Shown: one piece after another, positions 2,924-28,870 of the stretch
Layout: each line of letters opens with the position of its first letter
Position numbering within the stretch: position 1 is the first letter of the stretch
Position numbers and translations under genes: made by a program
The notes under the pieces: model-generated
What the model was told of the DNA's origin: nothing
Databases searched by the model: none
Seen by the model: only the letters and a program-made list of their open reading frames with translations
IMG/VR virus record: IMGVR_UViG_3300027770_001980
Coordinates: 62,001 to 126,000 of that record
Length of the DNA stretch: 64,000 bases
Reading direction: 5' to 3' (one strand)

Positions 2924-5205
2924 TGCTACAACCAAATAAAGACCTCGAAGATATTTTTGAATCAGCCGTTGGATATGCTAACGAGCATCGTCATGAATAC
3001 CTTACATTGGAACACTTCTTATATGGTATGGTGAAGAACGAACAGTTTGCAAAACTATTGACAAACTTTGGTGCTAAAGTAGATACGATAATCTCCGATC
3101 TTGAAACATTCATTAATGAAAATTTAAAAGAAATCGTCAACGATAGCGTAGATCGTCCTAAGAAAACTGCCACTGTTGATCGTATGCTACATCGTGCATA
3201 CAATACAGCATTATTCTCCGGAAGAAAAATAATTGAACCTGTGGACTGCTTTATCAGCATTTTCGCAGAGAAGAAAAGTCATGCATGTTACTTCGTAAGA
3301 AAAGCCAATATTGATAAAGACAAATTTATTAGTTATGTGCAGAAAGAGCAAGTAGAAGATGTTGAGGAAGAAGGTGAAAAACCGGTCAATCCTCAAGTTG
3401 AACGTATGCTTAATCAATTCTGTGTCAATCTATCTGCTCGTGCTAAAGGTAAGAAGATTGATCCTGTTATTGGGCGCGAGAAAGAACTCGAAGAAGTTGA
3501 ATTAGTATTGGCCCGTAGAAATAAATCTAACGTGATGCTGATTGGTGATCCGGGTGTGGGTAAGACTGCTATTGCTGAAGGACTTGCACGTAAGATACAC
3601 GAAGGTGCTGTTCCTAAATTCATCCAAGAACATACTGTTTACAGTCTCGATATTAGTGCATTGTTAGCAGGCAGCAAGTATCGTGGAGACTTTGAAGAAC
3701 GTCTTAAAATGGTAATTGGTGCTCTCGAGAAGAAAAAGAACTGTATCTTGTTCATTGATGAGGCACATATGATGAGTGGTGCTGGTGCCAGTAGTGGTGG
3801 CAGTAATGATATGGCCAATATGCTTAAACCAGCATTGAGCAAGGGCACTATCAAAGTGGTAGCCAGCACAACATGGGAAGAATATCGCAAGCACTTTGAA
3901 AAGGATCGTGCTCTAATGCGTAGATTCCAACGTGTTACTGTTGATGAGCCAAATGAAGCAACCTGTATTAAGATCCTTAAAGGACTTAAGAAGTATTACG
4001 AGAAACATCACGGTGTTAAGATCACCAACCAAGCAATCACCGATGCTGTAACTTACTCTGTCAAGTATATGACTGATAAGAAACTGCCGGACAAGGCCAT
4101 CGATCTTATCGATTGTGCCAGTGCTCGCTTCAAGATCAAAGATGAGGAAAACGGTGTAGTGGATCACGATGAGATCATGTTTGAAGTGGCTAAGATCGCT
4201 AATCTTCCACTGGAACAGATCAATGCCAAAGAAGGTAGCAATCTTGCAGGACTCGAAAAAGGCATGCGTGGTAAAGTGTTCGGACAAGAGAAAGCGATCG
4301 AAACATTGCTGGACAAGATCTTTATTGCACAGGCAGGACTAAAAGCATTCAATAAACCCGTTGGTAGTTTCTTGTTTGTTGGCCCAACTGGTGTAGGTAA
4401 GACAGAAGTTGCTAAACAACTGGCTTCTAACATGGGAATCAAACTAATACGCTTTGATATGAGTGAATTCCAAGAGAAACACAGCGTGGCCAAGTTCATC
4501 GGTGCACCTCCTGGATATGTAGGCTTTGAAGATAACGCAGGACAACTGATCACTAACCTACAAGAAACACCAAACTGTGTGCTATTGTTAGATGAAGTTG
4601 AAAAAGCACATCCTGATGTTCTAACAGTCATGCTACAGTTGATGGACAATGGCTTTATCACCGGCAGCAATGGCAAGAAAGCAGACGGACGCAACGCTAT
4701 TATCATCATGACCAGTAACTTGGGTGCTGCTGATGCTGAAAAGAACGGTGTTGGATTTGGTAGTTTAGATCGCGATAGTGATCCTAAGGATGCTGTCAAC
4801 AAGTTCTTTGCACCTGAATTCCGCAATCGTTTAGATGGTATCATCAAGTTTGGTAAGTTGGATCAAACCAGCATGACTAAAGTGGTTAAGAAGTTTGTTG
4901 ATGATCTGAACGCATTGATCAAAGATAAGAATGTCAGTATTAAACCCAATGCAGAGGCTATTGAGTATCTGATCAAGAAAGGATTTGATAGCAAGATGGG
5001 TGCAAGACCACTACAGCGTACCATTGATGAATACATCAAGAAGCCATTGAGCAAGGAAATCTTGTTTGGCAAGTTGACTAACGGTGGAGTAGTTGAGATA
5101 TCTGTTGAGAAAGATCAACTAAAACTCAATGTGATTGAAGTATTGCCAGTTGAACGAGTTAAGGTAGTGGACAAAGATGCAGATACAGAAACTATCGTCC
5201 AGTAA
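2923..5205 (+). CDS. clpA: ATP-dependent Clp protease ATP-binding subunit (ClpA-like, two AAA+ domains)
   Basis: Clp N-domain (HEYLTLEH); Walker A GDPGVGKT and GPTGVGKT; FIDEAH and LLDEVEKAH Walker B; no ClpB middle domain. Confidence 0.93.
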   Translation: MLQPNKDLEDIFESAVGYANEHRHEYLTLEHFLYGMVKNEQFAKLLTNFGAKVDTIISDLETFINENLKEIVNDSVDRPKKTATVDRMLHRAYNTALFSGRKIIEPVDCFISIFAEKKSHACYFVRKANIDKDKFISYVQKEQVEDVEEEGEKPVNPQVERMLNQFCVNLSARAKGKKIDPVIGREKELEEVELVLARRNKSNVMLIGDPGVGKTAIAEGLARKIHEGAVPKFIQEHTVYSLDISALLAGSKYRGDFEERLKMVIGALEKKKNCILFIDEAHMMSGAGASSGGSNDMANMLKPALSKGTIKVVASTTWEEYRKHFEKDRALMRRFQRVTVDEPNEATCIKILKGLKKYYEKHHGVKITNQAITDAVTYSVKYMTDKKLPDKAIDLIDCASARFKIKDEENGVVDHDEIMFEVAKIANLPLEQINAKEGSNLAGLEKGMRGKVFGQEKAIETLLDKIFIAQAGLKAFNKPVGSFLFVGPTGVGKTEVAKQLASNMGIKLIRFDMSEFQEKHSVAKFIGAPPGYVGFEDNAGQLITNLQETPNCVLLLDEVEKAHPDVLTVMLQLMDNGFITGSNGKKADGRNAIIIMTSNLGAADAEKNGVGFGSLDRDSDPKDAVNKFFAPEFRNRLDGIIKFGKLDQTSMTKVVKKFVDDLNALIKDKNVSIKPNAEAIEYLIKKGFDSKMGARPLQRTIDEYIKKPLSKEILFGKLTNGGVVEISVEKDQLKLNVIEVLPVERVKVVDKDADTETIVQ

Positions 5206-6330: not shown

Positions 6331-7875
6331 ATGGCAAAACAAACAATAAATGTAGGAAGTGGAGAATATGCAGGTGATGGTGAAAGCCTGCGTTCAGCAT
6401 TGGTTAAGACCAATGAAAATTTCGACGAAGTTTACACAAATATTGATATTATCAATACTGCTGGTTATATAACTATTGATTCAGTACCAACCAATGTAGG
6501 TGATTTTAACAATGATGTTGGTTACCTAACCACAGAAACATTACCTGCATATCCTACAGTACCAACCAATGTAGGTGATTTTAACAATGATGTCGGTTAC
6601 CTAACCACAGACACATTACCTGCAACACCAACTGATCGATTAACAGCAGGGACAACTGCTACATTAGTATTGCTTGATGACGGAACACTCAAACTTACAC
6701 ATCCCACCGAATGGTGGAGTGGTGCTTATTCTTTAGAGATACAAAAAGACGCAGGTAACTATCATACTTTTAAGAGTTCCTATGGGTTAAGTCTACAGGC
6801 AACACCTGTTCCTAATGGCTATGGACTTAATACAAACACTAACTTTGTAGATATTTTCCACGATGGCGTCAGTGTTAATGTAAATGATAACACTTGGGGA
6901 TTTGGAACAGATGGTAGTTTAGCATTTCCAACAGCGGGGGCAGAATGGCCTATAACAGAATATTATGTTCCTACTCTTATCGGTAAAGATCAAATATCTT
7001 TTGCTACATATAATGCTGAAAATAGCACAAGTTCATATGCCGTATCAACTCAGGATAACAAAAGTTGGGAAGTATTTGCTGAAGATGATGTGGTCGGTTA
7101 TGGTTCTGGATGGGCATATCTAAGGGTAGAATTACCCACAATAGATACCCCTCAAGTTAATATTGAAACCAGGAAAGGTATTGATGGTGTTGACTATACT
7201 TGGACATTTGACGCAGATGGCAAATTAACCACACCTGGACATATTATCCCTAATGCTGATCTCGCATACGATTTAGGCAGCACCTCCAGTCAATGGAGAA
7301 ACCTATACGTTGGAACAGGTTTAGTATTTGTTGCTAACACACTGACCGATATCGGCATCACATTTGCCGATGGTTCTAGACTTACTTCAAGCAATGGTAT
7401 TGGAAGAACATCAATCGGTGATACCTATGTATCAGGTGCTTTCCAACAATTAACAATAGCAGATGATGAAGGAACATTGATTACAATTGCTGGAGGAAAC
7501 AGCCTCTTTAGATTACCACAACTAACCGCAGACATGTTAGGTGCTGAATTTGAATTTTATTTCTCTGATGTTGCTGGACAAGTTTATATACAGAGTTATT
7601 ATACAGGTGTTAGAGAAACCACCGATGTCTTTAGAGGTTCGATATATGTTGGAGTAGACAACGCAACTACTGGTAAGCTGCACACAGCCACTGCAACAAC
7701 TTCAACTGCCTGTGTTTTATTCCTTGGACAACATCATGCCAAGGAAGGCAGTTATATTAAAGTTAAAGCTATTGCGTTTGACACAGTAGGTACTTGGATG
7801 TTTCAAGGCATGTGCGTAGGTGATACCGGACAAACTCCTAATAGTTCAGACCATCCTTTCCAAGATTATAACTAA
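6331..7875 (+). CDS. Fibre/baseplate-like structural protein with T4 gp9/gp10-like N-terminus
   Basis: N-terminus MAKQTINVGSGEYAGDGESLRSALVKTNENFDEVY resembles the gp9/gp10 N-terminal motif; WxFxxDGxLxxP fibre-type repeats; Thr/Gly-rich. Confidence 0.6.
   Translation: MAKQTINVGSGEYAGDGESLRSALVKTNENFDEVYTNIDIINTAGYITIDSVPTNVGDFNNDVGYLTTETLPAYPTVPTNVGDFNNDVGYLTTDTLPATPTDRLTAGTTATLVLLDDGTLKLTHPTEWWSGAYSLEIQKDAGNYHTFKSSYGLSLQATPVPNGYGLNTNTNFVDIFHDGVSVNVNDNTWGFGTDGSLAFPTAGAEWPITEYYVPTLIGKDQISFATYNAENSTSSYAVSTQDNKSWEVFAEDDVVGYGSGWAYLRVELPTIDTPQVNIETRKGIDGVDYTWTFDADGKLTTPGHIIPNADLAYDLGSTSSQWRNLYVGTGLVFVANTLTDIGITFADGSRLTSSNGIGRTSIGDTYVSGAFQQLTIADDEGTLITIAGGNSLFRLPQLTADMLGAEFEFYFSDVAGQVYIQSYYTGVRETTDVFRGSIYVGVDNATTGKLHTATATTSTACVLFLGQHHAKEGSYIKVKAIAFDTVGTWMFQGMCVGDTGQTPNSSDHPFQDYN
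6482..6624 (+). repeat. In-frame tandem duplication, 75-bp period, 2 copies
   Basis: Copies start at 6482 and 6557 and encode VPTNVGDFNNDVGYLTT(E/D)TLPA. Confidence 0.9.
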
Positions 7876-7881: not shown

Positions 7882-8241
7882 ATGAAACTTACAGAATTCT
7901 TTAATCAGCCTATACAAATAAGCAAACGCGGTCAAGACACCGAGGATGACAAGCGTGCCGACGAACTCTTCTGGTACATCATCGACCACGATAAACTACA
8001 CAAAGATTACTTCCACTCTATCGCTCGCAAAGTAAAAAAGATGAAAGAATTCACTCCCGAGCAAGTGTCGGAAATGTATATGCCTATGGTGATCAAAGGT
8101 TGTAAAGAATACTATCACGAAAAAGAATTAAAAGGCAAGTTAGGTAAGGAATTTCCTCAAGAAATGAGAGATGACATGTGCCATAGACTGCATGATCACT
8201 ATCGCGAAGATATTGAAAAAGATATATACAAGTTAGGATAA
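7882..8241 (+). CDS. Hypothetical protein with CTS-like N-terminus (MKLTEF)
   Basis: 119-aa ORF; N-terminal motif shared with four neighbouring genes. Confidence 0.7.
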   Translation: MKLTEFFNQPIQISKRGQDTEDDKRADELFWYIIDHDKLHKDYFHSIARKVKKMKEFTPEQVSEMYMPMVIKGCKEYYHEKELKGKLGKEFPQEMRDDMCHRLHDHYREDIEKDIYKLG

Positions 8242-8245
8242 CGCT

Positions 8246-11200
8246 GTGAACTTAACCGAACTATTTAGAAATCCTAAATTAGCCATCAACGAAGGTGGCA
8301 ATGTATCTAATCAAAGTCCAGGGTGGCAAGGAGTTCCGGGAGATCATCAGGCACAGGAACTTGATCTGCATGTCCATGATCGCGCCTATGTGCAAGATGT
8401 AGTAAGCCAACTATTACATACTATTAACGATGTATATGCTCAACAGCATCAAGAACCATTATGGCATGAGAATTCCGTAAAAACTCAAAAGTTCTTGAGT
8501 GGTAGCACTTTACAATTCATGGATAAGAATATTCCAGATGAAGAATTCATTCGTGTTAAACCTAAAGTAGGCGATATTGATACACAGGCGTCTGACCAAC
8601 ATGCTGATACAATCAAACAGTTCTTACAAAGCAATACAGGCAAGGCGTTTGGCAATGCCGTATTGTTAGGATTCACCCCGGGTAATAGTCAATGGGTTAG
8701 TCTATGGGAGATCAAATTAAAAGATCTACCTGTCAAGATACAGATCGACTTTGAATATGGAGCACATGAGAAGGAAACAGGATTACCTACAGAGTGGCAA
8801 TCATATAGTCATAGTAGTGCATGGGATGATATATCTCAAAACATCAAAGGTGTATTCCACAAATATTTAGATCGTGCATTGCCATACGCACAGGCCAGTA
8901 CCAAGTATGTGGCCCGTGTATTAAAGAAAAGCACCAAGATCTCCGATGCACCTGTTACAGATAGTGATTATAGTTTCGCTGTCAGTGGACCAGGCGGCGG
9001 TGGTGTTAGTCAGAAGTATGTGCCTTACAATGATCCTGCCACTGGGCAACCTATGGAGAAAGATGGAATTCCTGTCATGCAATTACTGGAACCCAGTGCA
9101 AGACAGTATGTTCAAAATCTCTCCCAACAATTTGAAATCTTCTTTGGACGCAAACCCAAAGGTAATGACCAAGAACTTAAAAACAGTTTCATTGGAACCA
9201 TACAACTAATCGCAAAATATTTAGATGAACAGAAGAAAGAAGAAATAGCAAGACGCTTCTTCAGCATATGTTTTGAACCAGGTAGTCAAATGATTACTCG
9301 TGGTGATCCGGCAAGAGATCGTGATATAAAATTTGCGGCTATCGATTGGATGTTGGAAAATATGAAGTTGGCTAATGCTGCTGGTTTGAGAAAAGAAGCA
9401 ATCGATATGGCCACTGCTTATGCTGCCGCTTTCCAAAATAAGGCCGCTAAACCAGTTAATGAAGAAGCACAGGTAAAAGCACAATTCCGTAAAGGTATGC
9501 CACACTTGCACGATCTTAAGCCTGCTGACTTGTTAGATCTATTAGACGAAATTCATGACGGAAACGGCAGATTTAAACTACAAAACATTCCTTTAAACGT
9601 CAAAGTAGACGGATTTGGTGGCAGATTTGGTAAGAATTCCGACGGTAAGCCTTTCATGGGCACCAGTAGAACAGAACCCAGATATGAACCAGGCTTCGTA
9701 GCGTATCATCAAAAGAAAGGCACCGTTGATCCGGAAATTTTAAACCGTGCTCAATTGTTTGATGACCTATTTGAGGAAATGATGAACGCTGTCCAATTAG
9801 TTGATAGCAAGTTAGGACCTGGATTTTTGGTCAACAAACAAGTCACATGTGAAGTATTGTATCTACCATTTGCTACAGAAACTCCAGAAGGTAAACTAAA
9901 GTTTGTTGGTATACATTATGACAAATTACCATCAGGTGTCAATCTTGCATTAGTTCCATTCCGTATCACAGATGCTACCACAGGTGAAGATTTACCTAAC
10001 TCAAACAAAATCGTCCAAGAATTAACCAGCGTAGGGCAGTCAGGTAGTGTCATGTTTATTGACAACAGCCTAACACAGAATGAAGCATTAGATGTTACAG
10101 CATTAGTTCCACCATTGGAAAACATTGAACAACTCAAAGGCATGTTGGCCAGCAACAAGTTAGAAGCCCGACGTCAAGTCAAGGCAGCATTGGAGCCAGT
10201 GGCAGCGGCATTAGAGAAGGCCATCATCGAAGATCCTAACATCATCGGTAAAGATTTATTAGGACAAGACTATGAAGGTATCGTTATCAACAGCCGCCTT
10301 GGTCCTATCAAAGTAACCAGTCAAGAACAGCGTGATGTTATCACTGCTAAAAATGCTGCTAAGACTAATGCAAGAACAGAGCGTCCAAGAGGCGAGGCTA
10401 AAACCGCAGTAGTTGCCATTGGTAGTTTCGTTGGACACATCGGCCACGAACAACTTTGGGACTATACAACTAAGAAAGCAGCAGCAGTAGGAGGTGATCC
10501 ATATTTGTTTATTGGCAATGCACAGGGCAAGGATGATCCTATTCCACCATCAGTTAAAGTTCAAACATGGCACAAACTGTATCCAGAATATGCTAAAAAT
10601 ATATCCACGGTGAATCAAGATGGCGGATCACTGCTACAAAAGATCAAACACGAATTAATCAATCCACTACCAGGCAAGCCTCCACGCTATGATAATGTCA
10701 TCATCATGGTAGGTGAAGATCAAGCAGGTCTCACTATGCCTCAAGCATTGATGAAGGCTGTTAACAAGTTCCAGGGTTACGAACATGTAAAAGTTACATT
10801 AGAACCGACACCGCGTGGTACAGGCATGAGTTTCACTCGACTACGCAACATCTTAAAAGATCCCAAGGCAACTCCAGATCAACAATTTGCTGAATGGTCT
10901 AAAGGGTTTGATGTGAGCAAATTAGGTGCAGACTGGATCTTACACCTTATGGATATAACAAGGAAAGGTATGGGAATACAACAACCACAGGCACCTGTTC
11001 CGCAGGCACAACCTACACCGTTAGCAGAACGCAGAGTATTAAATGCTCTAATCGAAGGTACCAGTATTGACAGCACACTACGAGCCATCATCAATGATGT
11101 TGGTGAACCTATTACCAATGTCTATGGCACGATGAAATTCCAAGCCAAGAAGTATATGGAAAATCACGGCGAACTCGGCCGTGGCTTTAGAATGGTAGCA

Positions 11201-13219
11201 GCAGGTGTTGGTGGTCGTTGGGTTCAAAATATGTATGTAGGTAGACTACAGAATGAACTATACGATCTATGCAAATACAATACTCGTAGAACTGTAGATC
11301 TACAAGAATTCCTACGCGGAGTCGAAACTGACGGTGAGTTAGAAATGAAGAGATCATTTGGCAACATCGCTAATAATCTACCTCCAATATTGGCCAAGTT
11401 AGGCGAACAAATCAACGCACCACAACTAACAAGAAATGCTCAGCGTTGGATGCAGAACAAAGCAGAATACGAACGATATCTAATGGATCTGGAAGCAGCA
11501 GGCGATGAGCCGGATGATATTCCTGTTAGAAGCAAGCCTCCAAAGAGTAATGCTGTCGGGCAACAGAATGCACAGGTTGATTCAATCATCAACAATGTGT
11601 TAGGTAAAGTTCCTAAAAGTATAGCAGGTGATATCCGTAATGCTATCGCTCGTGCTCCAAACAAATTGGCAGCATTGAAAGCGGAGTTAGATCGTCACAA
11701 TATCAATATGGCAGAAGACAATGATGTTATGTCACGCATGGCTCGAGATCTAACTGGTCCAGGTGCTCCTGATGCGAAACGCAGAGCCCAACGCGATCAA
11801 CAGCGTCAGCAGGATCGTGCTCAAAGTGATGGCAGAGATCATGGCCCTAAATGGGATGTAGAGGAAGGCGAACAAGATCCACAGTCAGAATTAAAACTGA
11901 TTAACCAAAAACTCAAAGATGCGTATAAACAAGTTCGTAACAATTCTTCTGTGTCAATAGGTTGGTACATGTCAGAGGTAAAAGCATTAAAAGCACGCCG
12001 CGAAGAATTGATTAAACAATTAAGACAAGGTGTGGCGGAGGCCGGTAGTCCTGCTCAACAGGCAGCAATAGCCATTTCTATGAAGAAAGCAGGAAAGAAA
12101 CCAAAAAGTGAAGATATCTCATTAAACGAACTATCAGGATACGGCGGTGATAAAAAATATGAGCACTTAGGCACTCATAAAAGATATGAGGTTTATGTCA
12201 CTAAACAAAAATTTAATAATTTATACTTTATTGCAATTGCCGAGAATACAAGAACGTTAGAGTCAAAATTTAAAGCAAAAGGTAACACTCCACAAGAAGC
12301 AGTGAATAATTTAAAATTAGAAATTGATAAAGAAATCGATGTTGCTACCAAAGTCAGTGGACAGGCTATATTAGATTTTAATGTTGATTTTGTAAAAGAT
12401 ATATTAGAAATGAGTTCCGATACATTCTACGCTAAAATAGTAGCGGGGCCAAGATTAGTTATAGCAGGACCTGAAATGATGGAATATCCTGAAATAATGC
12501 GTGATGAAGGATTTAAGCCAAGTGCTATTAGAACATATAAGGGTGGCGAGGGGACTACAAAACTTCCAGGAGTTCCGCTAAGTTCTAAATCAGCAGCGTC
12601 CGCAAATCTTATTGCCAATGGTAGATATGTGTTAGGAAATGAAGAACTCGATAAAGACGGCAATAGAGTATTTGAGTTAAACTTTGATAGTGTGGTACAG
12701 GCGTCAAACGATAAAATGAGACTAAGGGCACCTGCTCTTACTGTAGGAACCAATAGATCTCAAGGTGTGTCAGAGGCTCCTAAAAGTGCTGCGGTTAGAT
12801 TAGGCAATGCTATCAAGCGTGTGCAAGGTACAACAGCAGCAAGCCAAGCAAGATCTGTTATCCCTTCAAGTATCCCTAAACCAGAACCCAAGAAGGATGA
12901 GAAAACTAATGAGAGAATGATGCCAGCCAGTATGTTCGCAGGCAGCAAAAAGAACAAACTCGGACCAGCAGGACAATGGAAGAACACCGGACCTAAAAAG
13001 AACAAACCAGCACAGGCCGGTGATTTAGTTGGCGGTATGGAGGAAAGTTTAAAAGATTCCAACCCTTGCTGGAAAGGCTATCACCCTGTGGGTACCAAGA
13101 AAAAGTCAGGTAAAACTGTTCCAAACTGTGTACCAGTGAGCGAGAATGTTGAAAACATTATGGATGCTCTGATTAACAAGATCGTAGTAAATGAAGCAAT
13201 TCAGAATAACCGTAAATGA
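8246..13219 (+). CDS. 1657-aa modular polyprotein: Pol-beta-like NTase, ligase-like KxDG domain, HIGH-motif nucleotidyltransferase and several small modules
   Basis: GTG start MNLTEL; SGS...GDID (8498-8581); NVKVDG (9602-9613) and later YEGIVI; HIGH (10436-10447) with GED and R..GMSFTRLR; C-terminal CWKGY...GKTVPNCVP module. Confidence 0.65.
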   Translation: MNLTELFRNPKLAINEGGNVSNQSPGWQGVPGDHQAQELDLHVHDRAYVQDVVSQLLHTINDVYAQQHQEPLWHENSVKTQKFLSGSTLQFMDKNIPDEEFIRVKPKVGDIDTQASDQHADTIKQFLQSNTGKAFGNAVLLGFTPGNSQWVSLWEIKLKDLPVKIQIDFEYGAHEKETGLPTEWQSYSHSSAWDDISQNIKGVFHKYLDRALPYAQASTKYVARVLKKSTKISDAPVTDSDYSFAVSGPGGGGVSQKYVPYNDPATGQPMEKDGIPVMQLLEPSARQYVQNLSQQFEIFFGRKPKGNDQELKNSFIGTIQLIAKYLDEQKKEEIARRFFSICFEPGSQMITRGDPARDRDIKFAAIDWMLENMKLANAAGLRKEAIDMATAYAAAFQNKAAKPVNEEAQVKAQFRKGMPHLHDLKPADLLDLLDEIHDGNGRFKLQNIPLNVKVDGFGGRFGKNSDGKPFMGTSRTEPRYEPGFVAYHQKKGTVDPEILNRAQLFDDLFEEMMNAVQLVDSKLGPGFLVNKQVTCEVLYLPFATETPEGKLKFVGIHYDKLPSGVNLALVPFRITDATTGEDLPNSNKIVQELTSVGQSGSVMFIDNSLTQNEALDVTALVPPLENIEQLKGMLASNKLEARRQVKAALEPVAAALEKAIIEDPNIIGKDLLGQDYEGIVINSRLGPIKVTSQEQRDVITAKNAAKTNARTERPRGEAKTAVVAIGSFVGHIGHEQLWDYTTKKAAAVGGDPYLFIGNAQGKDDPIPPSVKVQTWHKLYPEYAKNISTVNQDGGSLLQKIKHELINPLPGKPPRYDNVIIMVGEDQAGLTMPQALMKAVNKFQGYEHVKVTLEPTPRGTGMSFTRLRNILKDPKATPDQQFAEWSKGFDVSKLGADWILHLMDITRKGMGIQQPQAPVPQAQPTPLAERRVLNALIEGTSIDSTLRAIINDVGEPITNVYGTMKFQAKKYMENHGELGRGFRMVAAGVGGRWVQNMYVGRLQNELYDLCKYNTRRTVDLQEFLRGVETDGELEMKRSFGNIANNLPPILAKLGEQINAPQLTRNAQRWMQNKAEYERYLMDLEAAGDEPDDIPVRSKPPKSNAVGQQNAQVDSIINNVLGKVPKSIAGDIRNAIARAPNKLAALKAELDRHNINMAEDNDVMSRMARDLTGPGAPDAKRRAQRDQQRQQDRAQSDGRDHGPKWDVEEGEQDPQSELKLINQKLKDAYKQVRNNSSVSIGWYMSEVKALKARREELIKQLRQGVAEAGSPAQQAAIAISMKKAGKKPKSEDISLNELSGYGGDKKYEHLGTHKRYEVYVTKQKFNNLYFIAIAENTRTLESKFKAKGNTPQEAVNNLKLEIDKEIDVATKVSGQAILDFNVDFVKDILEMSSDTFYAKIVAGPRLVIAGPEMMEYPEIMRDEGFKPSAIRTYKGGEGTTKLPGVPLSSKSAASANLIANGRYVLGNEELDKDGNRVFELNFDSVVQASNDKMRLRAPALTVGTNRSQGVSEAPKSAAVRLGNAIKRVQGTTAASQARSVIPSSIPKPEPKKDEKTNERMMPASMFAGSKKNKLGPAGQWKNTGPKKNKPAQAGDLVGGMEESLKDSNPCWKGYHPVGTKKKSGKTVPNCVPVSENVENIMDALINKIVVNEAIQNNRK
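12026..12040 (+). repeat. Recurrent module-junction motif CAAGGTGTGGCGGAG (QGVAE)
   Basis: First 14 nt identical to 14839-14852; related copies at 12761-12775 (CAAGGTGTGTCAGAG) and 15148-15162 (AGAGGTGTGGAGGAA). Confidence 0.7.
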
Positions 13220-13451
13220 TATTCCGCAAAGTAGTGAAGATGACTGCTACTTGTCTCCAGAAGATCCTATACACGAACTAAAAGCCACATCTATCATGGG
13301 TGGATTGGGTGGGCAAGAACGGCTGGCAGCATACAAGGCCACATTGAGACAGCCTGTTGTAGGCAGCAATAAAGGGCAGATACAACGAGAGCAGAACATC
13401 AAACCCGGAACTGAGGAATGGTTCGAACTTTGGTTTGGTCGTAATAAATAA
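13191..13451 (+). CDS. Hypothetical protein
   Basis: 86-aa ORF overlapping the previous stop; ends IKPGTEEWFELWF. Confidence 0.65.
   Translation: MKQFRITVNDIPQSSEDDCYLSPEDPIHELKATSIMGGLGGQERLAAYKATLRQPVVGSNKGQIQREQNIKPGTEEWFELWFGRNK
13444..13450 (+). promoter_or_regulatory. Putative late promoter core (ATAAATA)
   Basis: ATAAATA 7 nt before the Dps ATG. Confidence 0.5.
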
Positions 13452-13457
13452 CATATC

Positions 13458-13898
13458 ATGGAACAATTAACACAAATCGCCAAGGTTGCTTTTGCCAGTG
13501 AATTCAGTTTCGCACTAAAAGCACAGAATTTCCACTGGAATGTAGAAGGTAGTGACTTCTTGGAATATCATCAATTGTTTGAAATGATATACAGCGAAGT
13601 ATACGGCAGCATTGATGACTTTGCTGAAAATCTACGCAAGTTAGGAACTTATGCTCCTGCCAGTTTATCACGATTCAACATGTTAACACAGGTTGGCGAT
13701 GAAACTGAAATACTACCATTAGAGGCCATGGTGAAAGAATTATTGATGGATAATGAGAAGATGATACTTATCCTGAAGAAAACATATGCTGCCAGTGAAG
13801 CAGCAGGTGAGCCTGGATTTAGTAACTTCTTGGCAGATCGCATTGATGGTCATCGCAAGCATGGTTGGATGTTGCGTGCCAGTAGCCGAGGTCAATAA
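13458..13898 (+). CDS. dps: Dps / ferritin-like DNA-protection protein
   Basis: FHWNVEGSDFLEYHQLFE, DDFAENLRKLG and HRKHGWML match Dps ferroxidase-centre motifs. Confidence 0.9.
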   Translation: MEQLTQIAKVAFASEFSFALKAQNFHWNVEGSDFLEYHQLFEMIYSEVYGSIDDFAENLRKLGTYAPASLSRFNMLTQVGDETEILPLEAMVKELLMDNEKMILILKKTYAASEAAGEPGFSNFLADRIDGHRKHGWMLRASSRGQ

Positions 13899-14263
13899 TG
13901 CGGGCACTTGAATTTATTACCGAAAAGAAAAATGGTAAACTTTCCAAGAGACAACAGCAACCCACAAGAGGTGCTAATGTCTACAGCGACGGTGAACAAG
14001 TAAGTGGTGATTATACCTCTTACAGGTTAGGTATGGCAGTAGCAGGGGCAGACGGCAAGACTCCGGTGAAAATAGATTCAAAAAGTTGGGTTGGCAAAAA
14101 GAAAACTACACATCCTTATTCAGAGGTAGAACAAGATATGTTAAAAGATGCCTACAAAGCAGTAGGTGCAAAATATACCGACCTTAACCACGGCGATATG
14201 ACCAGCAAAGAGTTAGAAGGAACAAACACAGTAAGTCCTGTAGCAAATTGGAATAAACAATGA
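13898..14263 (+). CDS. Hypothetical protein with CTS-like N-terminus (MRALEFITE)
   Basis: TAATG-coupled to dps; N-terminus resembles T4 internal-protein CTS MKTYQEFIAE. Confidence 0.7.
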   Translation: MRALEFITEKKNGKLSKRQQQPTRGANVYSDGEQVSGDYTSYRLGMAVAGADGKTPVKIDSKSWVGKKKTTHPYSEVEQDMLKDAYKAVGAKYTDLNHGDMTSKELEGTNTVSPVANWNKQ

Positions 14264-16017
14264 ACAACGAATTTAAACAAATATCAAAAGGCGATATAAC
14301 TCGTTATGTATTAGAAAGTGGCAGCAGCGGTGGCACCAGTTCGGGAAGTGTTGCCAGTGTCAGTATGCCCATAGGCGGTACACGCAAGCGAGGTGCTAAT
14401 CTAATCGCACAAGAAGCAGATAAGAAAACAGTTCCAGCAACTACTCCAAGAAACTTCGTTGCCAAAAATGCCAAATCAAGTGGTGCCGGTGCTCACAAAG
14501 ATAAAAAGAAAGCAGCCAAGCAAGGTCAAGAAAAACATAAGAAACCTTTTATGGAAGACCATAGTACCGCCTCAGGCGGATGGGGTAAAGGCAGCTACGA
14601 TACATATACCGCAGGCAATCATGGACGCGGAGTTGCTGAAGATGAAAGAGACCACCCTGATCATGAAATACAAATGGCCAGTAGTGAACTACTAAGTATT
14701 GCCAAGAATGCTGAAGAATTGTTAGGCTTAGTACGTCGCTATAGCGAACAGGAAGGGCTTGATGCTTGGCAACAAAGTAAAATTACCAAAGCAGCCGACT
14801 ATTTGAATAGTGTGCTACAAAGCGTCAACGGTGAACAGCAAGGTGTGGCGGAAGGCTCTGAAACATCACAACAGCAACAAGTTCGTGCTGCAATTACTAA
14901 AGGCATGGAAAAATGGGATAGTAATAATAAGTCTACATATCAGAGTCAACCAACTAAAACTAATTATATGCCACCCAGCGGTTACGCTAGCGATTCATTG
15001 ACAGGAGTAGATTCCATTGATCCTGATGGTACCGTGGTCATATCTCTTGGAAATACTGGTGCCGAAGCCACAATTAAAAAATTAGCAACATTAGGTGGTA
15101 TGCCCGGCATTAAAACTAGACAACTGCAATCACCAACCGTTTCATCTAGAGGTGTGGAGGAAGGTGAGGGAAAACGCTGTATGCAATGTGGCATGACTAA
15201 CTGTACATGCCCACCGGGTAAATGCAAATGCAAACCCGTTGCAGGATGGATCCCAAACAAGGGATTTAAGAAAGATGTAGACGAAAGTTGGGATGATATT
15301 AAAAAGTTTGGCAAGAAGGCCGCAGTTGCAGGTGCTATAGGACTCGGCATTGGTGCCGCACATGCCGGCGGATGGTCACCCTCCGATGTTCCAGCAGGCG
15401 GACATAATCAACTGCCGGACATCGTTGCCCATGTTAAGTTTAAAGTGGGTGACAAGGAAGTTAGCAAAGAGATCAATTTAGGATCACACTATCGCTCACC
15501 AGGTGAGGCAGGTAAAGAACTTGAGAACTTTTTAAAGTCTAAAGGGATAAAATTCTACGAATATAGTCTTGAAAGAGTTAAACCAAAGGACGACGATAAG
15601 ATGGATAGTTCCCCTGCTACCGGCGATATGAAAGGTAGCATGGATACTAAAGAACCTGCTGCTACTGGCCCATCTACAGACAACTATATGGCCAAAGATA
15701 ACGATCCAGAACACGGACCGTCAATGGGCGGAAAGTTTGTTAAAGAAGGTGCAAAGGTCGATCGTCAGGCCAAGCATATTACTGCCAGTATGATGAAGAA
15801 AGGCAAGAGCAAGAAAGATGCAGAATCTATTGCTTGGGCACATATCAAACATCCTAAGAACGAAAGCGCAGATCCATACTTTGAATCACTACAATCTATG
15901 GTTGAGAGACAACTGGAACCTAACATGGAATTAGATACATGGATTGATAATTTCCAACATGCTGATCCAAATAAGTATCACCAATTTAAAAATAAGACCC
16001 CAGAAAAAAAAAAGTAA
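14260..16017 (+). CDS. Modular low-complexity polyprotein with repeated Glu-terminated junctions (GVAE/GVEE/VDE/VKE)
   Basis: 585-aa ORF of short Lys/Gly-rich modules; contains a six-Cys module and an internal signal-peptide-like segment; possible -1 extension to 16070. Confidence 0.65.
   Translation: MNNEFKQISKGDITRYVLESGSSGGTSSGSVASVSMPIGGTRKRGANLIAQEADKKTVPATTPRNFVAKNAKSSGAGAHKDKKKAAKQGQEKHKKPFMEDHSTASGGWGKGSYDTYTAGNHGRGVAEDERDHPDHEIQMASSELLSIAKNAEELLGLVRRYSEQEGLDAWQQSKITKAADYLNSVLQSVNGEQQGVAEGSETSQQQQVRAAITKGMEKWDSNNKSTYQSQPTKTNYMPPSGYASDSLTGVDSIDPDGTVVISLGNTGAEATIKKLATLGGMPGIKTRQLQSPTVSSRGVEEGEGKRCMQCGMTNCTCPPGKCKCKPVAGWIPNKGFKKDVDESWDDIKKFGKKAAVAGAIGLGIGAAHAGGWSPSDVPAGGHNQLPDIVAHVKFKVGDKEVSKEINLGSHYRSPGEAGKELENFLKSKGIKFYEYSLERVKPKDDDKMDSSPATGDMKGSMDTKEPAATGPSTDNYMAKDNDPEHGPSMGGKFVKEGAKVDRQAKHITASMMKKGKSKKDAESIAWAHIKHPKNESADPYFESLQSMVERQLEPNMELDTWIDNFQHADPNKYHQFKNKTPEKKK
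14839..14853 (+). repeat. Recurrent module-junction motif CAAGGTGTGGCGGAA (QGVAE)
   Basis: 14-nt exact match to 12026-12039 in a different gene. Confidence 0.7.
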
Positions 16018-16066
16018 TGGCCACAGCGGCCTTGTATAAAGCAAGACAGCCCAAGGTGAAGAAACA

Positions 16067-16849
16067 ATGAGACTAGATGAGTTTGATCAAGAAGACTACG
16101 AGATACGCAATCTAAAGAAGTTAGATGGTATCTTGGTCACACTCTGCAAATTGGTCATTGAAGGCCAAAAGAGAGATAAAGAACGCTATGGTATGGTCGC
16201 TGCCGCTGTATTAGATCCTGACAATAATTTGGTCATGGGATTAAATTATATGCAAGGCGATTTACATGTCCACGCTGAAAAAGCGGCCATGGAAGCCTAC
16301 GATAGAAAATACGGAGATATTCCAGAAGGCAGTATTCTTCTTACTACATTGAGTCCTTGCAGTGAATTCAGTGACGAAACTGCACAAGAAAGACACGGGG
16401 ATAGTTGTACCGATCTAATTAATAATTCCATCATACGAAAAGTCTATTGCGGGTTTATGGATCCAAGCCAAGGTGATGACGAGCACGAAGAAAGAGAATT
16501 CACTCTACAAGAAACTAACAATACCAATATTAGAACATTATGTGAAAAGTTTGCTGATACATTCTTGGAAGATGAGTTGAATGAATCTGCTGCTTGGCAT
16601 CGTAAGGCAGGTAAGAATAAAACAGGTGGGCTCAATCGTAAAGGCGTTATGAGTTATCGTAGAGAGCACCCTGGCAGTAAACTACAAACCGCAGTAACCA
16701 CTAAACCCAGTAAATTGAAACCGGGTAGCAAGGCTGCTAAACGCCGTAAATCATTCTGTGCTAGAATGGGCGGCGTTGATGGTCCTATGAAAAAAGATAA
16801 CGGTGAGCCCACACGGAAAGCATTGGCACTAAGAAAGTGGAACTGCTAA
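16067..16849 (+). CDS. Zn-dependent cytidine/RibD-type deaminase domain fused to a basic C-terminal phage module
   Basis: MRLDEF N-terminus; HVHAE and TTLSPC...C deaminase motifs; after LNE a basic module (AAWHRKAGKN...RRKSFCARM...WNC) like DUF6321 of T4-like phages. Confidence 0.7.
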   Translation: MRLDEFDQEDYEIRNLKKLDGILVTLCKLVIEGQKRDKERYGMVAAAVLDPDNNLVMGLNYMQGDLHVHAEKAAMEAYDRKYGDIPEGSILLTTLSPCSEFSDETAQERHGDSCTDLINNSIIRKVYCGFMDPSQGDDEHEEREFTLQETNNTNIRTLCEKFADTFLEDELNESAAWHRKAGKNKTGGLNRKGVMSYRREHPGSKLQTAVTTKPSKLKPGSKAAKRRKSFCARMGGVDGPMKKDNGEPTRKALALRKWNC

Positions 16850-17457
16850 TGCGTATCAATGAACTACTTGAAAGTGCAGGTGATTTACCAAGCGATCCCG
16901 GTCCTAGAGAATTTATTAGTAATAAATTTCATGTTAAATTTACCAACGATGCTCTTTTAGTTTACGATGGCGGTGAACTTGTTTATAAAAGGCCAGGAAA
17001 TTTCTCAAACCCAACTAGGCAAAATGCGTCAAATGCAAAAGGTGTCACTAATACCCTGTGGAGGGCTAAACACGATCCAGCATATAAAAATCTAGCCAGT
17101 TCTCCTTACTTGGTTATAAAACCAAGTGACGTTCATAAAGCAGCCGACAAAAAAGGTATACCGTGGGATAAAGATAGGAAATTTTTTAATTTATCAAAAA
17201 AACTAACAGGTAAAGGTCATTTAGATAACATGACCCCAGAAGAACTTAGAATAATGTTTGATTACTTAACTAAGATAAAAGTTAGAGAAAACTTTGCTGA
17301 CGGTCGGCATCCTGAGGATAAGGGCGACTCAAAGCGTTATCATGTTCCTACCAAAGGTAGTGTCAGTAGTTTGAGAAAGTTTGCTAAAAATCATTCAGGT
17401 CGGGCAGCACAATTGGCACACTGGGCTGCCAATATGAAAGCAGGTAAAAAGAAATAA
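16849..17457 (+). CDS. Hypothetical modular protein with CTS-like N-terminus (MRINEL)
   Basis: Start refined to the ATG overlapping the previous TAA (TAATG at 16847-16851); C-terminal module begins VRE-NFADG. Confidence 0.65.
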   Translation: MRINELLESAGDLPSDPGPREFISNKFHVKFTNDALLVYDGGELVYKRPGNFSNPTRQNASNAKGVTNTLWRAKHDPAYKNLASSPYLVIKPSDVHKAADKKGIPWDKDRKFFNLSKKLTGKGHLDNMTPEELRIMFDYLTKIKVRENFADGRHPEDKGDSKRYHVPTKGSVSSLRKFAKNHSGRAAQLAHWAANMKAGKKK

Positions 17458-28827: not shown

Positions 28828-28842
28828 TTTTTCTAAATAGTG

Positions 28843-28870
28843 TTGACTTTTCTAAATACAAGTGTATAAT
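28843..28870 (+). promoter_or_regulatory. sigma70-type promoter for queE
   Basis: TTGACT (28843-28848), 16 bp, TATAAT (28865-28870). Confidence 0.65.

What the first reader, a model, noticed from the sequence alone, without database searches (positions are those of the whole stretch)
8246..16017. Polyproteins built of modules separated by Glu-terminated, protease-like sites
Seen: both long ORFs break into unrelated segments at hydrophobic-x-E sites: AINE-GGN, PVNE-EAQ, PLAE-RR, LIE-GT, MAE-DN, VEE-GE, GVAE-AG, LNE-LS, GVSE-AP, TNE-RM, MEE-SL, VSE-NV in the 1657-aa protein, and VLE-SG, FME-DH, GVAE-DE, GVAE-GS, GVEE-GE, VDE-SW, VKE-GA, KNE-SA in the 585-aa protein. Domain boundaries of the enzymatic modules fall at such sites. 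Established: T4 gp21 cleaves after Glu in L/I-x-E-type sites. Inference: a viral polyprotein strategy in which one capsid-targeted precursor is cut into many independent effectors during head maturation.
Basis: partly seen in the sequence, partly recalled or inferred. Interest (0 to 1): 0.8.

Follow-up and report, generated by a model that had tools for sequence, protein, structure and literature searches.

The report
Phage cargo polyproteins with swappable cassettes
Two long genes of an uncultured 221-kb T4-like lake phage are strings of interchangeable protein cassettes joined at glutamate-ending sites that fit the phage's own head-maturation protease, and the commonest joint is also a conserved 15-base DNA word, so one short sequence may serve as both cutting site and cassette-swapping site.

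Summary
Modules are inserted, lost and reordered exactly there. Contigs from four other lakes also break there.

The plain [LIVM]-x-E count is not enriched. The real signal is Glu at every junction, with the canonical form QGVAE|G/A (400 seen, 6 expected).

The capsid and protease reading is supported only indirectly:
- The genome encodes a gp21-family (S77) prohead protease, a scaffold packed with [LIV]-x-E sites, and a major capsid protein (MCP) with ...SLSE|SATAGS.
- ORF B's N-terminus aligns with the MCP across that site.
- Six ORFs at 7.9-17.5 kb, and no other window ORF, start with a leader resembling the T4 capsid-targeting sequence (CTS).

Cleavage and packaging themselves were not tested.

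One result is new. QGVAE is nearly always encoded as CAAGGTGTGGCGGAR, using rare codons. It occurs in more than 120 IMG/VR stretches and reads in frame in 170 of 174 matches. This points to a DNA-level role, most simply an in-frame recombination linker.

No description was found in the literature searched. I rate it a new variant of known kinds (T4 internal proteins, polyvalent proteins).

The parts
8246..13219 (+). ORF A, a 1657-aa polyprotein. It has a conserved N-terminal core (~1-940) followed by a variable cassette array.
8246..8293 (+). ORF A leader, residues 1-16 (VNLTELFRNPKLAINE|GGN). The M-x-L-x-E-[LF]-F start and the x-x-E|GGN end are conserved. Some homologues carry a ~190-aa HExxH module inserted before E|GGN.
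   Evidence: The own 81-aa head-core-position protein starts MLLNEFIYF.
8294..9463 (+). Residues 17-406: Pol-beta-like nucleotidyltransferase domain (G86-S87 ... D110-I-D112). It is a free-standing gene in Campylobacter and Vibrio T4-like phages. It ends at PVNE406.
   Evidence: The fold assignment is a lead only.
9464..11029 (+). Residues 407-928: RNA-ligase-like domain (KVDG motif, ~418-700) plus a HIGH-motif nucleotidyltransferase (715-910, GHIGH). It ends at PLAE928.
   Evidence: phrog_3041, E 9e-11; Foldseek: FAD synthetase, PPAT, NMNAT; E~1e-3
11030..11056 (+). Nine-residue spacer RRVLNALIE937, bounded by two sites. It is the strongest breakpoint cluster in ORF A.
   Evidence: low pLDDT
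11057..11716 (+). Residues 938-1157: helical module. Residues 939-1086 fold with pLDDT 80-90. In other homologues the same module follows a GVAE site. It ends at MAE1157.
   Evidence: (M17)
11717..12040 (+). Residues 1158-1265: two short helical or basic segments split at DVEE1207, which aligns with GPKWGVAE| in homologues. They end at the canonical site QGVAE1265.
12026..12041 (+). Canonical DNA linker CAAGGTGTGGCGGAGG, encoding QGVAE|A. Contigs from other lakes diverge exactly here (12039).
12041..12130 (+). Residues 1266-1295: recurring peptide AGSPAQQAAIAISMKKAGKKPKSE1289, then DISLNE1295.
   Evidence: low-pLDDT linker 1282-1301
12131..12775 (+). Residues 1296-1510: most of cassette M2 (220-358 aa in 10 homologues, where it sits in different neighbourhoods). 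Run X4 has no depth over 12197-12709. It ends at QGVSE1510.
12761..12776 (+). Variant DNA linker CAAGGTGTGTCAGAGG, encoding QGVSE|A.
12776..13216 (+). Residues 1511-1657: three recurring small peptides, APKSAAVRL...TNE1556 | RMMPASMFAGSKK...MEE1600 | SLKDSNPCWKGY...PNCVP. Two other lake populations carry a 315-nt insertion at E1556.
14260..16017 (+). ORF B, a 585-aa polyprotein. Residues 1-198 and roughly 494-585 are conserved across the family; the middle is variable.
14260..14556 (+). ORF B residues 1-99. Leader MNNEFKQISKGDITRYVLE19, then an MCP N-arm look-alike (SGSSGGTSSGSVASVSMPIGGTRKRGANLIAQE), then a DUF7230-like basic peptide ending FME99.
14557..14853 (+). ORF B residues 100-198: two modules ending at RGVAE127 and QQGVAE198. 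The canonical DNA linker lies at 14839-14854. Residues 100-129 are deleted in two other lake populations.
14854..15747 (+). ORF B residues 199-496: variable modules bounded by RGVEE301, VDE342 and VKE496.
15748..16014 (+). ORF B residues 497-585: a 39-aa basic peptide (497-535), deleted between E496 and E535 in another population, then the conserved C-terminal module.
   Evidence: joint 15746->15870, side 232
7882..8241 (+). 119-aa ORF directly upstream of ORF A with the same leader type (MKLTEFF...).
13898..14263 (+). 121-aa ORF starting MRALEFITE|KK, the closest match in the window to the T4 CTS MKTYQEFIAE.
16067..17457 (+). Two further leader-bearing ORFs. The first is a deaminase-fold protein plus DUF6321 (MRLDEFDQE..., junction ...ELNE|SAAW). 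The second is a 202-aa ORF starting MRINELLE|S at 16849.

Best explanation
ORF A and ORF B are cargo polyproteins of a T4-like jumbo phage.

Proposed mechanism. Each starts with a short leader resembling a T4 capsid-targeting sequence; ORF B's leader also imitates the MCP's own propeptide junction. The leader would take the precursor into the scaffolding core of the prohead. There the phage's gp21-family (S77) protease would cut after Glu at [V/I/L/M]-x-E sites. This would release the nucleotidyltransferase and ligase-type enzymes and many small basic peptides, which stay in the head and would enter the host with the DNA.

Second function of the joint. The commonest joint, QGVAE|G/A, is also a conserved 15-nt DNA word, CAAGGTGTGGCGGAR. 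Recombination between copies would keep the reading frame and regenerate a cleavable junction, so cassettes can be gained, lost and reordered freely.

Shown: the mosaic structure, Glu at the junctions, the DNA-level conservation, the presence of the protease, and the similarities of the leaders and of ORF B to the MCP.

Inferred: packaging, cleavage, injection, and recombination at the word.
For: Breakpoints sit at the sites.
- 45% and 58% of homology breakpoints lie at the listed sites.
- HSP ends pile up on GVxE about 5-fold over null.
- Cassettes of identical length appear in different orders: P0009 is M3|M9, P0056 is M9|M3; M5, M6, M8 and M13 keep their lengths.
- Whole modules are inserted at E16, E406 and E937 in homologues.

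Glu is the constant.
- Four recurrent peptides are nearly always preceded by Glu one to three residues upstream, usually with V/I/L/M at P3. The sequence further upstream is unrelated.
- GVAE occurs 400 times against 6.3 expected. GVAD occurs only twice.

The genome has the protease and typical substrates.
- Peptidase_S77, 209 aa, is 33% identical to T4 gp21 (pairwise E 8e-20), with GEVDHP and GVSSRG conserved.
- The scaffold has 28 [LIVMF]xE sites in 360 aa. The MCP has RRSLSE41|SATAGS.
- gp21 cuts after L/I-x-E (PMC9026906).

Targeting.
- ORF B residues 15-52 align with the MCP N-terminus: E 7e-5 for the L132 MCP, 1e-3 for the phage's own MCP, 2e-6 for homologue P0144.
- T4 IPII and IPIII start MKTYQEFIAE.
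- Six of 49 window ORFs start M-x2-3-E-[FL], and all six lie in 7882-17457.
- MRAxEFITE-type leaders occur on well over 100 ORFs in related loci.

Links to head genes and virions.
- QGVAE polyprotein genes lie just downstream of the MCP gene, next to a gp21 homologue, in loci L107 and L132; L165 shows the MCP only.
- Cytidylyltransferases are repeatedly detected in cyanophage virions (PMC10665884). ORF A 697-916 matches that family, phrog_3041.

Structure.
- E406, E928/E937, E1207 and E1289/E1295 lie in low-pLDDT linkers.

DNA level.
- 39 of 49 unique QGVAE sites read CAAGGTGTGGCGGA[AG].
- GTG rises from 15% to 84% and GCG from 9% to 90% relative to the same ORFs.
- The GTGGCG pair is found in 12% of other VAE sites in these ORFs and 0% of VAE sites elsewhere.
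- More than 120 IMG/VR stretches carry the word, and 170 of 174 matches read in frame.
- Contigs from other lakes break at 12039, 14837/14856, 14556, 15746/15870 and 12903-12916.
Against: - There are no protein-level data: no virion proteome, no N-termini, no protease assay.
- The genes sit among replication and proteostasis genes (DnaJ, Pdf, ClpB-like, Dps, polB). They are about 70 kb from the head module.
- A neighbour with the same leader looks like a dCMP/cytidine deaminase, an unexpected capsid cargo.
- P3 is not always hydrophobic (KSE|A, KVE|A, TNE|R).
- The phage's own MCP, scaffold and other head proteins contain no canonical QGVAE, so the canonical form is not simply the protease's best site.
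- The C-terminal model is poor (mean pLDDT 49.5), so most linker calls there are uninformative.
- The DNA-level conservation could by itself explain why breakpoints fall on QGVAE, without any cleavage.
- The T4 late promoter TATAAATA is absent from the locus, so late timing cannot be read from sequence.
Confidence: 0.6

Rival explanations
1. These are uncleaved multidomain (polyvalent-type) proteins. The Glu-ending joints are flexible linkers, and QGVAE is conserved only because its DNA word serves as an in-frame recombination site. There is no proteolysis.
For: Synonymous positions of the word are strongly conserved. Population breakpoints fall on it. No protease domain is found in ORF A or B. 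Some polyvalent proteins, such as the N4 virion RNA polymerase, are packaged unprocessed (PMC5512222).
Against: Junctions without the DNA word still nearly all have Glu just upstream of the recurring peptide, mostly with V/I/L/M at P3 and with varied codons. The GA of the Glu codon never varies among near-matches to the word, while other positions do. D and Q almost never replace E. The rule matches the specificity of a protease this genome encodes.
Confidence: 0.2
2. The precursors are cut at these sites in the cytoplasm by another Glu-specific protease, either from the host or a phage enzyme encoded elsewhere, such as the HExxH module some homologues carry. The products act inside the infected cell and are not packaged.
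For: The locus sits among non-structural genes next to DnaJ, Pdf and a ClpB-like gene. Nucleotide-metabolism-type domains are fused to such sites. Three homologues have an N-terminal HExxH module.
Against: ORF A and ORF B have no HExxH or other protease module. The leaders resemble the T4 CTS and the MCP propeptide junction. Related polyprotein genes abut the MCP and protease genes. Related cytidylyltransferases are found in virions (PMC10665884).
Confidence: 0.12
3. The conserved word acts on the mRNA or on translation, for example an AGGUG Shine-Dalgarno-like pause or rare-codon pause that separates the folding of successive modules. The peptide it encodes would be incidental.
For: The word uses rare GTG and GCG codons and contains AGGTG. 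It always sits between modules.
Against: This does not explain the invariant Glu at junctions that lack the word. It does not explain the leaders or the MCP similarity.
Confidence: 0.05
4. The listed sites are chance occurrences of a common tripeptide.
For: The [LIVM]-x-E density in ORF A and B is ordinary.
Against: Permutation tests give p<5e-5 and p=0.003. GVAE is enriched 63-fold. Independent population breakpoints fall on the sites.
Confidence: 0.01

Closest known systems
T4 internal proteins IPI-III and Alt: CTS-bearing head cargo processed by gp21
   Same: The phage is T4-like and has an S77 protease. The N-terminal leaders resemble the CTS (MRALEFITE, MNNEF..., xNLTELF versus MKTYQEFIAE). 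Sites end in Glu with an aliphatic P3. The leader-bearing genes form a variable, clustered locus away from the head genes, as the IP genes do in T4.
   Different: T4 IPs and Alt lose only a short propeptide. Here up to about 12 internal sites would release many unrelated modules from one chain. The main site is a fixed pentapeptide, QGVAE, encoded by a fixed DNA word. The cargo includes ~400-500-aa enzymes.
Polyvalent proteins of phages and conjugative elements (Iyer et al. 2017, PMC5512222)
   Same: Large phage proteins made of many unrelated, rapidly shuffled domains. They are predicted to be packaged and delivered with the DNA, and predicted to be processed into active pieces. Some homologues carry lysozyme, LysM, HD or HExxH modules.
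   Different: The hallmark domains of that collection were not found in ORF A or B. Processing there is ascribed to built-in MPTase domains, whereas here it is ascribed to the head protease. No conserved inter-domain cleavage or recombination word is described in the passages retrieved from that paper.
Head and inner-body proteins of phiKZ-like giant phages, processed by a gp21-like protease at S/A-x-E (PMC9026906)
   Same: Many head proteins are cut after Glu at a minimal motif. Sites are multiple and redundant. The cargo is ejected into the host.
   Different: Those cleavages mostly remove propeptides. The phage lineage is different. Cassette mosaicism and DNA-level linker conservation have not been reported there.
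Cyanophage and T4-like 'cytidyltransferase' multi-module proteins (phrog_3041; e.g. Melnitz gp18, Sf-CH8 gp135)
   Same: ORF A 697-916 matches this family (E 9e-11). These proteins also string a HIGH nucleotidyltransferase with CW(KGY/DTH)...PNCVP and other small modules, with joints such as PGVEE|A. They are reported in virion proteomes (PMC10665884).
   Different: They are shorter and have fewer modules. The canonical QGVAE word was not seen in the two sequences examined, and their processing has not been studied.
Polyproteins of eukaryotic RNA viruses (3C-like Q/E|G sites)
   Same: One ORF would yield many products, with short conserved P1 Glu/Gln and P1' Gly/Ala sites.
   Different: ORF A and B contain no protease. 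This is a dsDNA phage. The cutting would take place in the prohead. The cassettes are optional rather than a fixed replication set.
PeSL-type mobile regulatory cassettes that mediate modular shuffling in T4-type genomes (Arbiol et al. 2010; cited from memory)
   Same: Short conserved DNA sequences flank variable units and would act as recombination points in T4-type phages.
   Different: PeSLs are intergenic promoter and terminator elements that shuffle whole genes. Here the element is coding, in frame, and shuffles protein modules within one ORF.

Membership tests
Substrates of a T4 gp21-family (Peptidase S77) prohead protease | The same genome encodes an S77 prohead protease | tested here: met
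   L290 is contig positions 130,650-151,537 of the window's own 221-kb contig. It holds a 209-aa gene with PF03420 that is 33% identical to T4 gp21 (E 8e-20), flanked by portal, scaffold and Gp23 genes.
Substrates of a T4 gp21-family (Peptidase S77) prohead protease | Sites of the form aliphatic-x-Glu, with the cut after Glu | tested here: met
   Glu precedes nearly every recurrent module junction. P3 is V/I/L/M in most, for example 11 of 16 contexts of the MMPASMFAGS peptide. The canonical form is V-A-E. The phage's own scaffold has 28 such sites and its MCP has SLSE|. This is a sequence-level match only.
Substrates of a T4 gp21-family (Peptidase S77) prohead protease | Cleaved in vivo; fragments present in mature heads | not testable with these tools
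   Needs virion proteomics or N-terminomics.
T4-type CTS-bearing internal proteins | A ~10-residue N-terminal targeting peptide ending in Glu and resembling MKTYQEFIAE | tested here: inconclusive
   The T4 IPII and IPIII N-termini were read from the record. Window leaders are MRALEFITE, MRINELLE, MRLDEFDQE, MKLTEFF, VNLTELF...INE and MNNEF...YVLE. Six of 49 ORFs have this start and all are clustered. The resemblance is clear but too short for statistics, and the targeting function is untested.
Polyvalent proteins (Iyer et al. 2017) | Between 2 and 15 unrelated domains in one phage polypeptide, with extensive mosaicism | tested here: met
Polyvalent proteins (Iyer et al. 2017) | Contains the collection's hallmark conflict domains (MPTase, ART, methylases, helicases and others) | tested here: not met
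   Pfam and PHROG searches find none in ORF A or B. An HExxH module occurs only in homologues P0036, P0051 and P0067.
Self-processing viral polyprotein | A protease domain within the polyprotein | tested here: not met
   No protease family or fold is detected in ORF A or B.
phrog_3041 cyanophage-type cytidyltransferase proteins | A HIGH-motif nucleotidyltransferase domain matching the family profile | tested here: met
   ORF A 697-916 matches phrog_3041 at E 9e-11. The GHIGH motif is invariant. Foldseek hits FAD synthetase, PPAT and NMNAT with probability 1.0.

The most novel reading that the evidence does not exclude
The 15-nt word CAAGGTGTGGCGGAR is a dedicated dual-purpose element. As protein (QGVAE|G) it is the head protease's cutting site. 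As DNA it is the crossover point of an in-frame cassette-exchange system shared by a large community of freshwater T4-like phages. This would let them trade injected effector modules much as integrons trade gene cassettes, but inside a single reading frame.
Probability: 0.35. Interest if true: 0.9.

Novelty: new variant of a known kind. Interest (0 to 1): 0.8.

Why it matters
If cleavage is confirmed, this would be a bacteriophage counterpart of the eukaryotic-virus polyprotein strategy. It would be coupled to head maturation and used to load a changeable set of enzymes and small peptides into the capsid for delivery with the DNA.

The cargo includes a nucleotidyltransferase, an RNA-ligase-like domain and a HIGH-nucleotidyltransferase trio. 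That combination is what one would expect of an RNA-repair or counter-defence kit, though this is only a suggestion. It also includes dozens of uncharacterised peptide families (DUF6321, DUF7230, CWKGY, DUF3008-like) that currently clutter phage annotations.

A junction that works both as a cleavage site and as a conserved DNA word gives a concrete, testable mechanism for how phages shuffle protein modules without breaking frames. Practically, the leader plus QGVAE joints could be a natural design for packaging and releasing several foreign proteins from T4-type heads.

Tried and rejected
- Counting generic [LIVM]-x-E shows no enrichment in ORF A or B. It was dropped as a test.
- Raw BLAST HSP-end residue profiles were too blurred, because the shared motif is included in the HSPs. 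They were replaced by offset histograms and segment clustering.
- Cultured phages: megablast finds nothing. tblastn of ORF B finds nothing. ORF A hits only separate-gene homologues of its domains.
- Sequence searches give the core no identity beyond the HxGH motif. A PDB profile search gives E~0.1. Pfam on ten inter-site segments gives nothing above threshold.
- The T4 late promoter TATAAATA occurs once in 64 kb against 9 expected, and not at this locus. It gives no timing information.
- T4 head genes were not found within +-10 kb of 80 ORF A-homologous loci. They were also absent from contig positions 43-144 kb. They were found only after walking to 141-150 kb.
- Scanning IMG/VR with the L132 MCP did not return the window's contig among the best 80.
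- The first two encoding-contig look-ups failed because I cut the minus-strand coordinates wrongly.
- The first MAFFT alignment for the C-terminal fold misplaced fragments and was rebuilt. The resulting model is still poor beyond residue ~1300.
- Literature searches for QGVAE return only alpha-synuclein papers, a coincidence. Searches for GVAE plus prohead, and for polyprotein plus jumbo phage, return nothing relevant.
- The homologous-protein search left over and the search of protein representatives were not used.

Full report
WHAT THE WINDOW IS. The window lies at about 62.0-126.0 kb of a 221,356-bp uncultured freshwater viral contig (JGI 3300027770 Ga0209086_10000006, also IMGVR_UViG_3300027770_001980). 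It has no nucleotide relative among cultured phages. It is a T4-like myovirus. It carries gp5-, gp25- and gp6-type baseplate genes at 58-64 kb on the minus strand. It has a T4-family DNA polymerase, closest at 45-51% identity to the jumbo phages Phosso and Atu_ph07, and gp46/47 homologues. The two ORFs of the finding are real: ORF A is 8246-13219 (1657 aa) and ORF B is 14260-16017 (585 aa).

CHECK OF THE OBSERVATION. The tripeptide [LIVM]-x-E is no more frequent in ORF A or B than in other ORFs of the window, so a simple count gives no support. A more specific motif stands out, however. [QR]-G-V-[A/S/E]-E occurs five times in A and B and nowhere else in the window.

Each ORF has a large metagenomic family (682 and 819 proteins with E<=1e-3; the best 120 of each were analysed). 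ORF A homologues are 949-1989 aa long. They share the first ~930 residues and differ after that. ORF B homologues share residues 1-198 and roughly 494-585.

In the 240 proteins GVAE occurs 400 times against 6.3 expected from composition. GVA is followed by E in 400 of 452 cases and by D in only 2. The consensus is [Q>R,K,E]-G-V-A-E-[G>A,E,D]. In ORF A homologues every GVxE lies beyond residue 950, in the variable part.

MODULES BREAK EXACTLY AT THE SITES. Five lines of evidence agree.
- HSP starts and ends pile up on GVxE about five-fold over a random-position null.
- Cutting the proteins at GVxE gives cassettes that recur with identical lengths in different neighbourhoods and orders. P0009 is M3|M9|M1 while P0056 is M9|M3|M1. 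M5 is 71/71 aa, M6 101/101, M8 106/106 and M13 103/103.
- Four recurrent peptides (..MMPASMFAGS....RMSAAVKL....GSPAQQAAI....KQRLDPKCWKGY..) are nearly always preceded by Glu one to three residues upstream, mostly with V/I/L/M two residues before that Glu. Everything further upstream is unrelated.
The sites cover 9% and 18% of the sequence. This gives p<5e-5 and p=0.003 against random sets of Glu. Listed sites average 19.5 breaks in ORF A; the other [LIVMF]xE sites average 1.6.
- The core alignment shows whole modules inserted at three sites: before E16|GGN (a ~190-aa HExxH module in P0036, P0051 and P0067), after E406 (65-200-aa modules in P0037, P0041, P0059 and P0120), and around E928/E937 (a LysM-lysozyme block in P0022).

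INDEPENDENT POPULATION EVIDENCE. Logan contigs of four other lake or aquatic metagenomes were laid on 11000-16100. They are 90-99% identical in stretches and break at the sites.
- Loose ends occur at 12039 (the end of the QGVAE1265 word) and at 14837/14856 (the QGVAE198 word).
- Residues 100-129 of ORF B are deleted in two runs (14556->14647).
- A clean deletion lies between E496 and E535 (15746->15870, 232 nt of flank).
- A 315-nt insertion sits at E1556 in two runs.
- Run X4 has high depth on both sides of the module at 12197-12709 and none over it.

STRUCTURE. The core model covers residues 1-945 (mean pLDDT 77.8). It has three folded parts joined by low-confidence linkers at 1-12, 400-417 (holding E406) and 913-945 (holding E928 and E937).
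- Residues 715-910 form a HIGH-motif nucleotidyltransferase. Foldseek hits FAD synthetase, PPAT and NMNAT at E~1e-3 with probability 1.0. The GHIGH motif is invariant and the segment matches phrog_3041 at E 9e-11.
- Residues 17-400 carry G-S...D-I-D. Their nearest neighbours in the ESM Atlas are free-standing viral proteins, some with the NTP_transf_2, pol X or CCA-adding folds. This is a lead only.
- Residues 418-700 carry K-V-D-G and resemble RNA ligases at TM~0.45-0.5. This too is a lead only.

Domains 1 and 2 are separate genes in Campylobacter, Vibrio and Xanthomonas phages, consistent with a junction at E406.

The model of residues 900-1657 is poor (mean pLDDT 49.5). Where it is informative, 939-1086 is a confident helical domain, and E928/E937, E1207 and E1289/E1295 lie in low-confidence segments. 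E1265 ends a helix. The remaining sites cannot be judged.

IS THERE A MATCHING PROTEASE? The head genes are not in the window. Walking along the contig with exact-protein look-ups reached the head module at about 141-150 kb. It holds, in order:
- a portal (573 aa);
- an 81-aa protein starting MLLNEFIYF;
- a 338-aa acidic protein;
- a 209-aa Peptidase_S77, 33% identical to T4 gp21 (E 8e-20), with GEVDHP and GVSSRG conserved;
- a 360-aa scaffold with 28 [LIVMF]-x-E sites, often [LIV]-A-E;
- a 393-aa Gp23-type MCP with ...ENTRRSLSE41|SATAGSTSAGNIATLNRVILPV.

T4 gp21 cuts after L/I-x-E, shreds the core proteins, and removes the 10-residue CTS of the internal proteins (PMC9026906).

TARGETING SIGNALS. 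ORF B residues 15-52 (RYVLE|SGSSGGTSSGSVASVSMPIGGTRKRGANLIAQE) align with the MCP N-terminus across the predicted maturation site. The pairwise E-values are 7e-5 against the MCP of a related phage (L132), 1e-3 against the phage's own MCP, and 2e-6 for homologue P0144. In the same register E19 falls on T4 gp23 LTE65|A, although that alignment is not significant on its own.

T4 IPII and IPIII begin MKTYQEFIAE. In the window exactly six of 49 ORFs begin M-x2-3-E-[F/L], and all six lie between 7882 and 17457:
- MKLTEFF (7882);
- VNLTELF (ORF A);
- MRALEFITE (13898);
- MNNEFK (ORF B);
- MRLDEFDQE (16067);
- MRINELLE (16849).

In related loci well over 100 different ORFs begin MRAxEFI[TV]E, MKTYQFITE and the like. 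Some consist of just a leader plus one of the recurring peptides: MRINELFE|NFADG... (65 aa), MKINEIISE|QKATKTRLDPKCW... and MRFTEIISE|DANPKRQAAIAIAMKK.... ORF A-family leaders (MILNELF, MLLNEFF) match the N-termini of the small gene that sits just after the portal gene in this phage and in L132.

The 7.9-17.5 kb block therefore looks like an internal-protein (cargo) locus, as in T-even phages. In L107 and L132 a QGVAE polyprotein gene lies immediately downstream of the MCP gene and next to a gp21 homologue; in L165 it follows the MCP gene, and no gp21 homologue was detected in that 4-kb locus. The literature reports cytidylyltransferases repeatedly in cyanophage virion proteomes (PMC10665884). 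ORF A domain 3 belongs to that family, and Melnitz gp18 and Sf-CH8 gp135 are smaller strings of the same kind.

AN UNEXPECTED DNA-LEVEL SIGNAL. The analysis used 80 loci found through the protein core, so they are unbiased with respect to DNA. In them 39 of 49 unique QGVAE sites are encoded CAAGGTGTGGCGGA[AG]. Relative to the same ORFs, GTG rises from 15% to 84%, GCG from 9% to 90% and GGT from 44% to 96%. The flanks are not conserved.

The GTGGCG pair is found at 82% of QGVAE sites and 70% of other xGVAE sites. It is found at only 12% of non-G VAE sites in the same ORFs and at 0% of VAE sites in other ORFs. Among in-frame near-matches to the word, the GA of the Glu codon never varies, while the first base (Q to K or E) and the wobble positions do.

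Many hold 2-5 copies spaced 50-250 codons apart, and 170 of 174 matches read as QGVAE in the longest frame.

So the canonical joint is under nucleotide-level constraint, or is continually homogenised. Given the mosaicism and the population breakpoints on the word, the simplest reading is that it serves as a short-homology, frame-preserving recombination point. Other DNA or RNA roles (translational pausing, a nuclease site) are not excluded.

SYNTHESIS. Shown:
- the ORFs are mosaics of cassettes;
- junctions end in Glu, usually with an aliphatic P3;
- the canonical junction is a conserved DNA word;
- the genome has a gp21-type protease, a scaffold and an MCP with matching sites;
- ORF B mimics the MCP junction;
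- the ORFs sit in a cluster of genes with CTS-like leaders.

Inferred:
- the precursors enter the prohead core through their leaders;
- they are cut at the joints by the S77 protease;
- the pieces are delivered with the DNA;
- recombination at the word shuffles the cassettes.

The main weaknesses are these. There are no protein-level data. The neighbourhood is non-structural (DnaJ, Pdf, ClpB-like, Dps, polB). One leader-bearing gene looks like a nucleotide deaminase. Some P3 residues are not aliphatic. The DNA word alone could account for breakpoints at QGVAE sites, though not at the many non-canonical Glu junctions.

COMPARISON AND NOVELTY. The system works like T4 internal proteins and Alt (CTS plus gp21 trimming) and like the heavily processed head cargo of phiKZ-like phages. 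In architecture it resembles the polyvalent proteins of Iyer et al. (PMC5512222). It differs from all of these in three ways: one chain would be cut at many internal joints into unrelated products, the main site is a fixed pentapeptide, and that site is also a conserved coding DNA word associated with cassette exchange. Full-text searches found no description of it. I rate it a new variant of known kinds, with high interest because both halves of the model are directly testable.

Noticed in passing
window 43267-58176 (-): A 4969-aa ORF lies directly after the gp6-type baseplate gene. It has a Laminin_G_3 hit and is followed by four fibre-like ORFs (240-427 aa) that share an N-terminal MAYI/MSYT motif. 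It is probably a giant baseplate or fibre protein.
   Followed up: partly
window 1605-5205 (+), plus contig upstream (L084): A proteostasis cluster sits just upstream of the cargo locus: a DnaJ-like protein (273 aa), peptide deformylase (166 aa) and a ClpA/ClpB-like double-AAA chaperone (760 aa). A Cpn10-like gene lies further upstream (L288). It might help handle very long or disordered precursors.
   Followed up: no
window 16067-16849 (+): A deaminase-fold protein (dCMP_cyt_deam_1, E 4e-9) has a CTS-like start (MRLDEFDQE) and a C-terminal DUF6321 module joined at ...ELNE|SAAW. It may be a packaged deaminase rather than a housekeeping dCMP deaminase.
   Followed up: partly
window 13458-13898 (+): A Dps/ferritin-like gene (PF00210, E 5e-17) lies between the two polyprotein genes and has no leader. 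Contigs from other lakes break inside it (13515-13550), so it is itself mosaic.
   Followed up: no
whole window: The T4 late-promoter octamer TATAAATA occurs once, against 8.9 +- 2.9 expected. Every one of 100 shuffles had at least one match. The phage probably uses a different late promoter, or the word is avoided.
   Followed up: no
window ~40000: G+C drops from ~0.40 (plus-strand block, 1-40 kb) to ~0.33 (minus-strand baseplate and fibre block, 40-62 kb), and the GC skew changes sign.
   Followed up: no
window 26922-30685: A nucleotide-sugar epimerase, a QueE-like radical-SAM enzyme and a 2OG-Fe(II) oxygenase lie near each other. HNH and homing endonucleases flank thymidylate synthase at 35362-39334. 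This may be DNA-hypermodification machinery.
   Followed up: no
homologues P0036, P0051 and P0067 (N-terminal ~190 aa): An HExxH (zincin-like) module is inserted between the leader start and the E|GGN junction of the ORF A family. It could be a built-in peptidase in some lineages.
   Followed up: partly
L290 5214-5459 (-) and L132 3672-3890 (+): The small gene just after the portal gene starts MLLNEFIYF or MILNELYQR. This is the same heptad as ORF A-family leaders, hinting at a shared core-binding N-terminus.
   Followed up: partly
L101 and L120 (IMG/VR): Some contigs hold 4-5 copies of the DNA word at regular spacing. L101 has four copies 162-165 nt apart, an array of ~54-aa peptides.
   Followed up: no
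window 6331-7875 (+): The 514-aa ORF two genes upstream of ORF A has weak Atlas similarity (0.88-0.90) to T4 gp9/gp10-N-type baseplate or fibre proteins. If real, ORF A is co-oriented with a structural gene and separated from it only by the 119-aa ORF at 7882-8241, with 4-6-nt gaps.
   Followed up: partly
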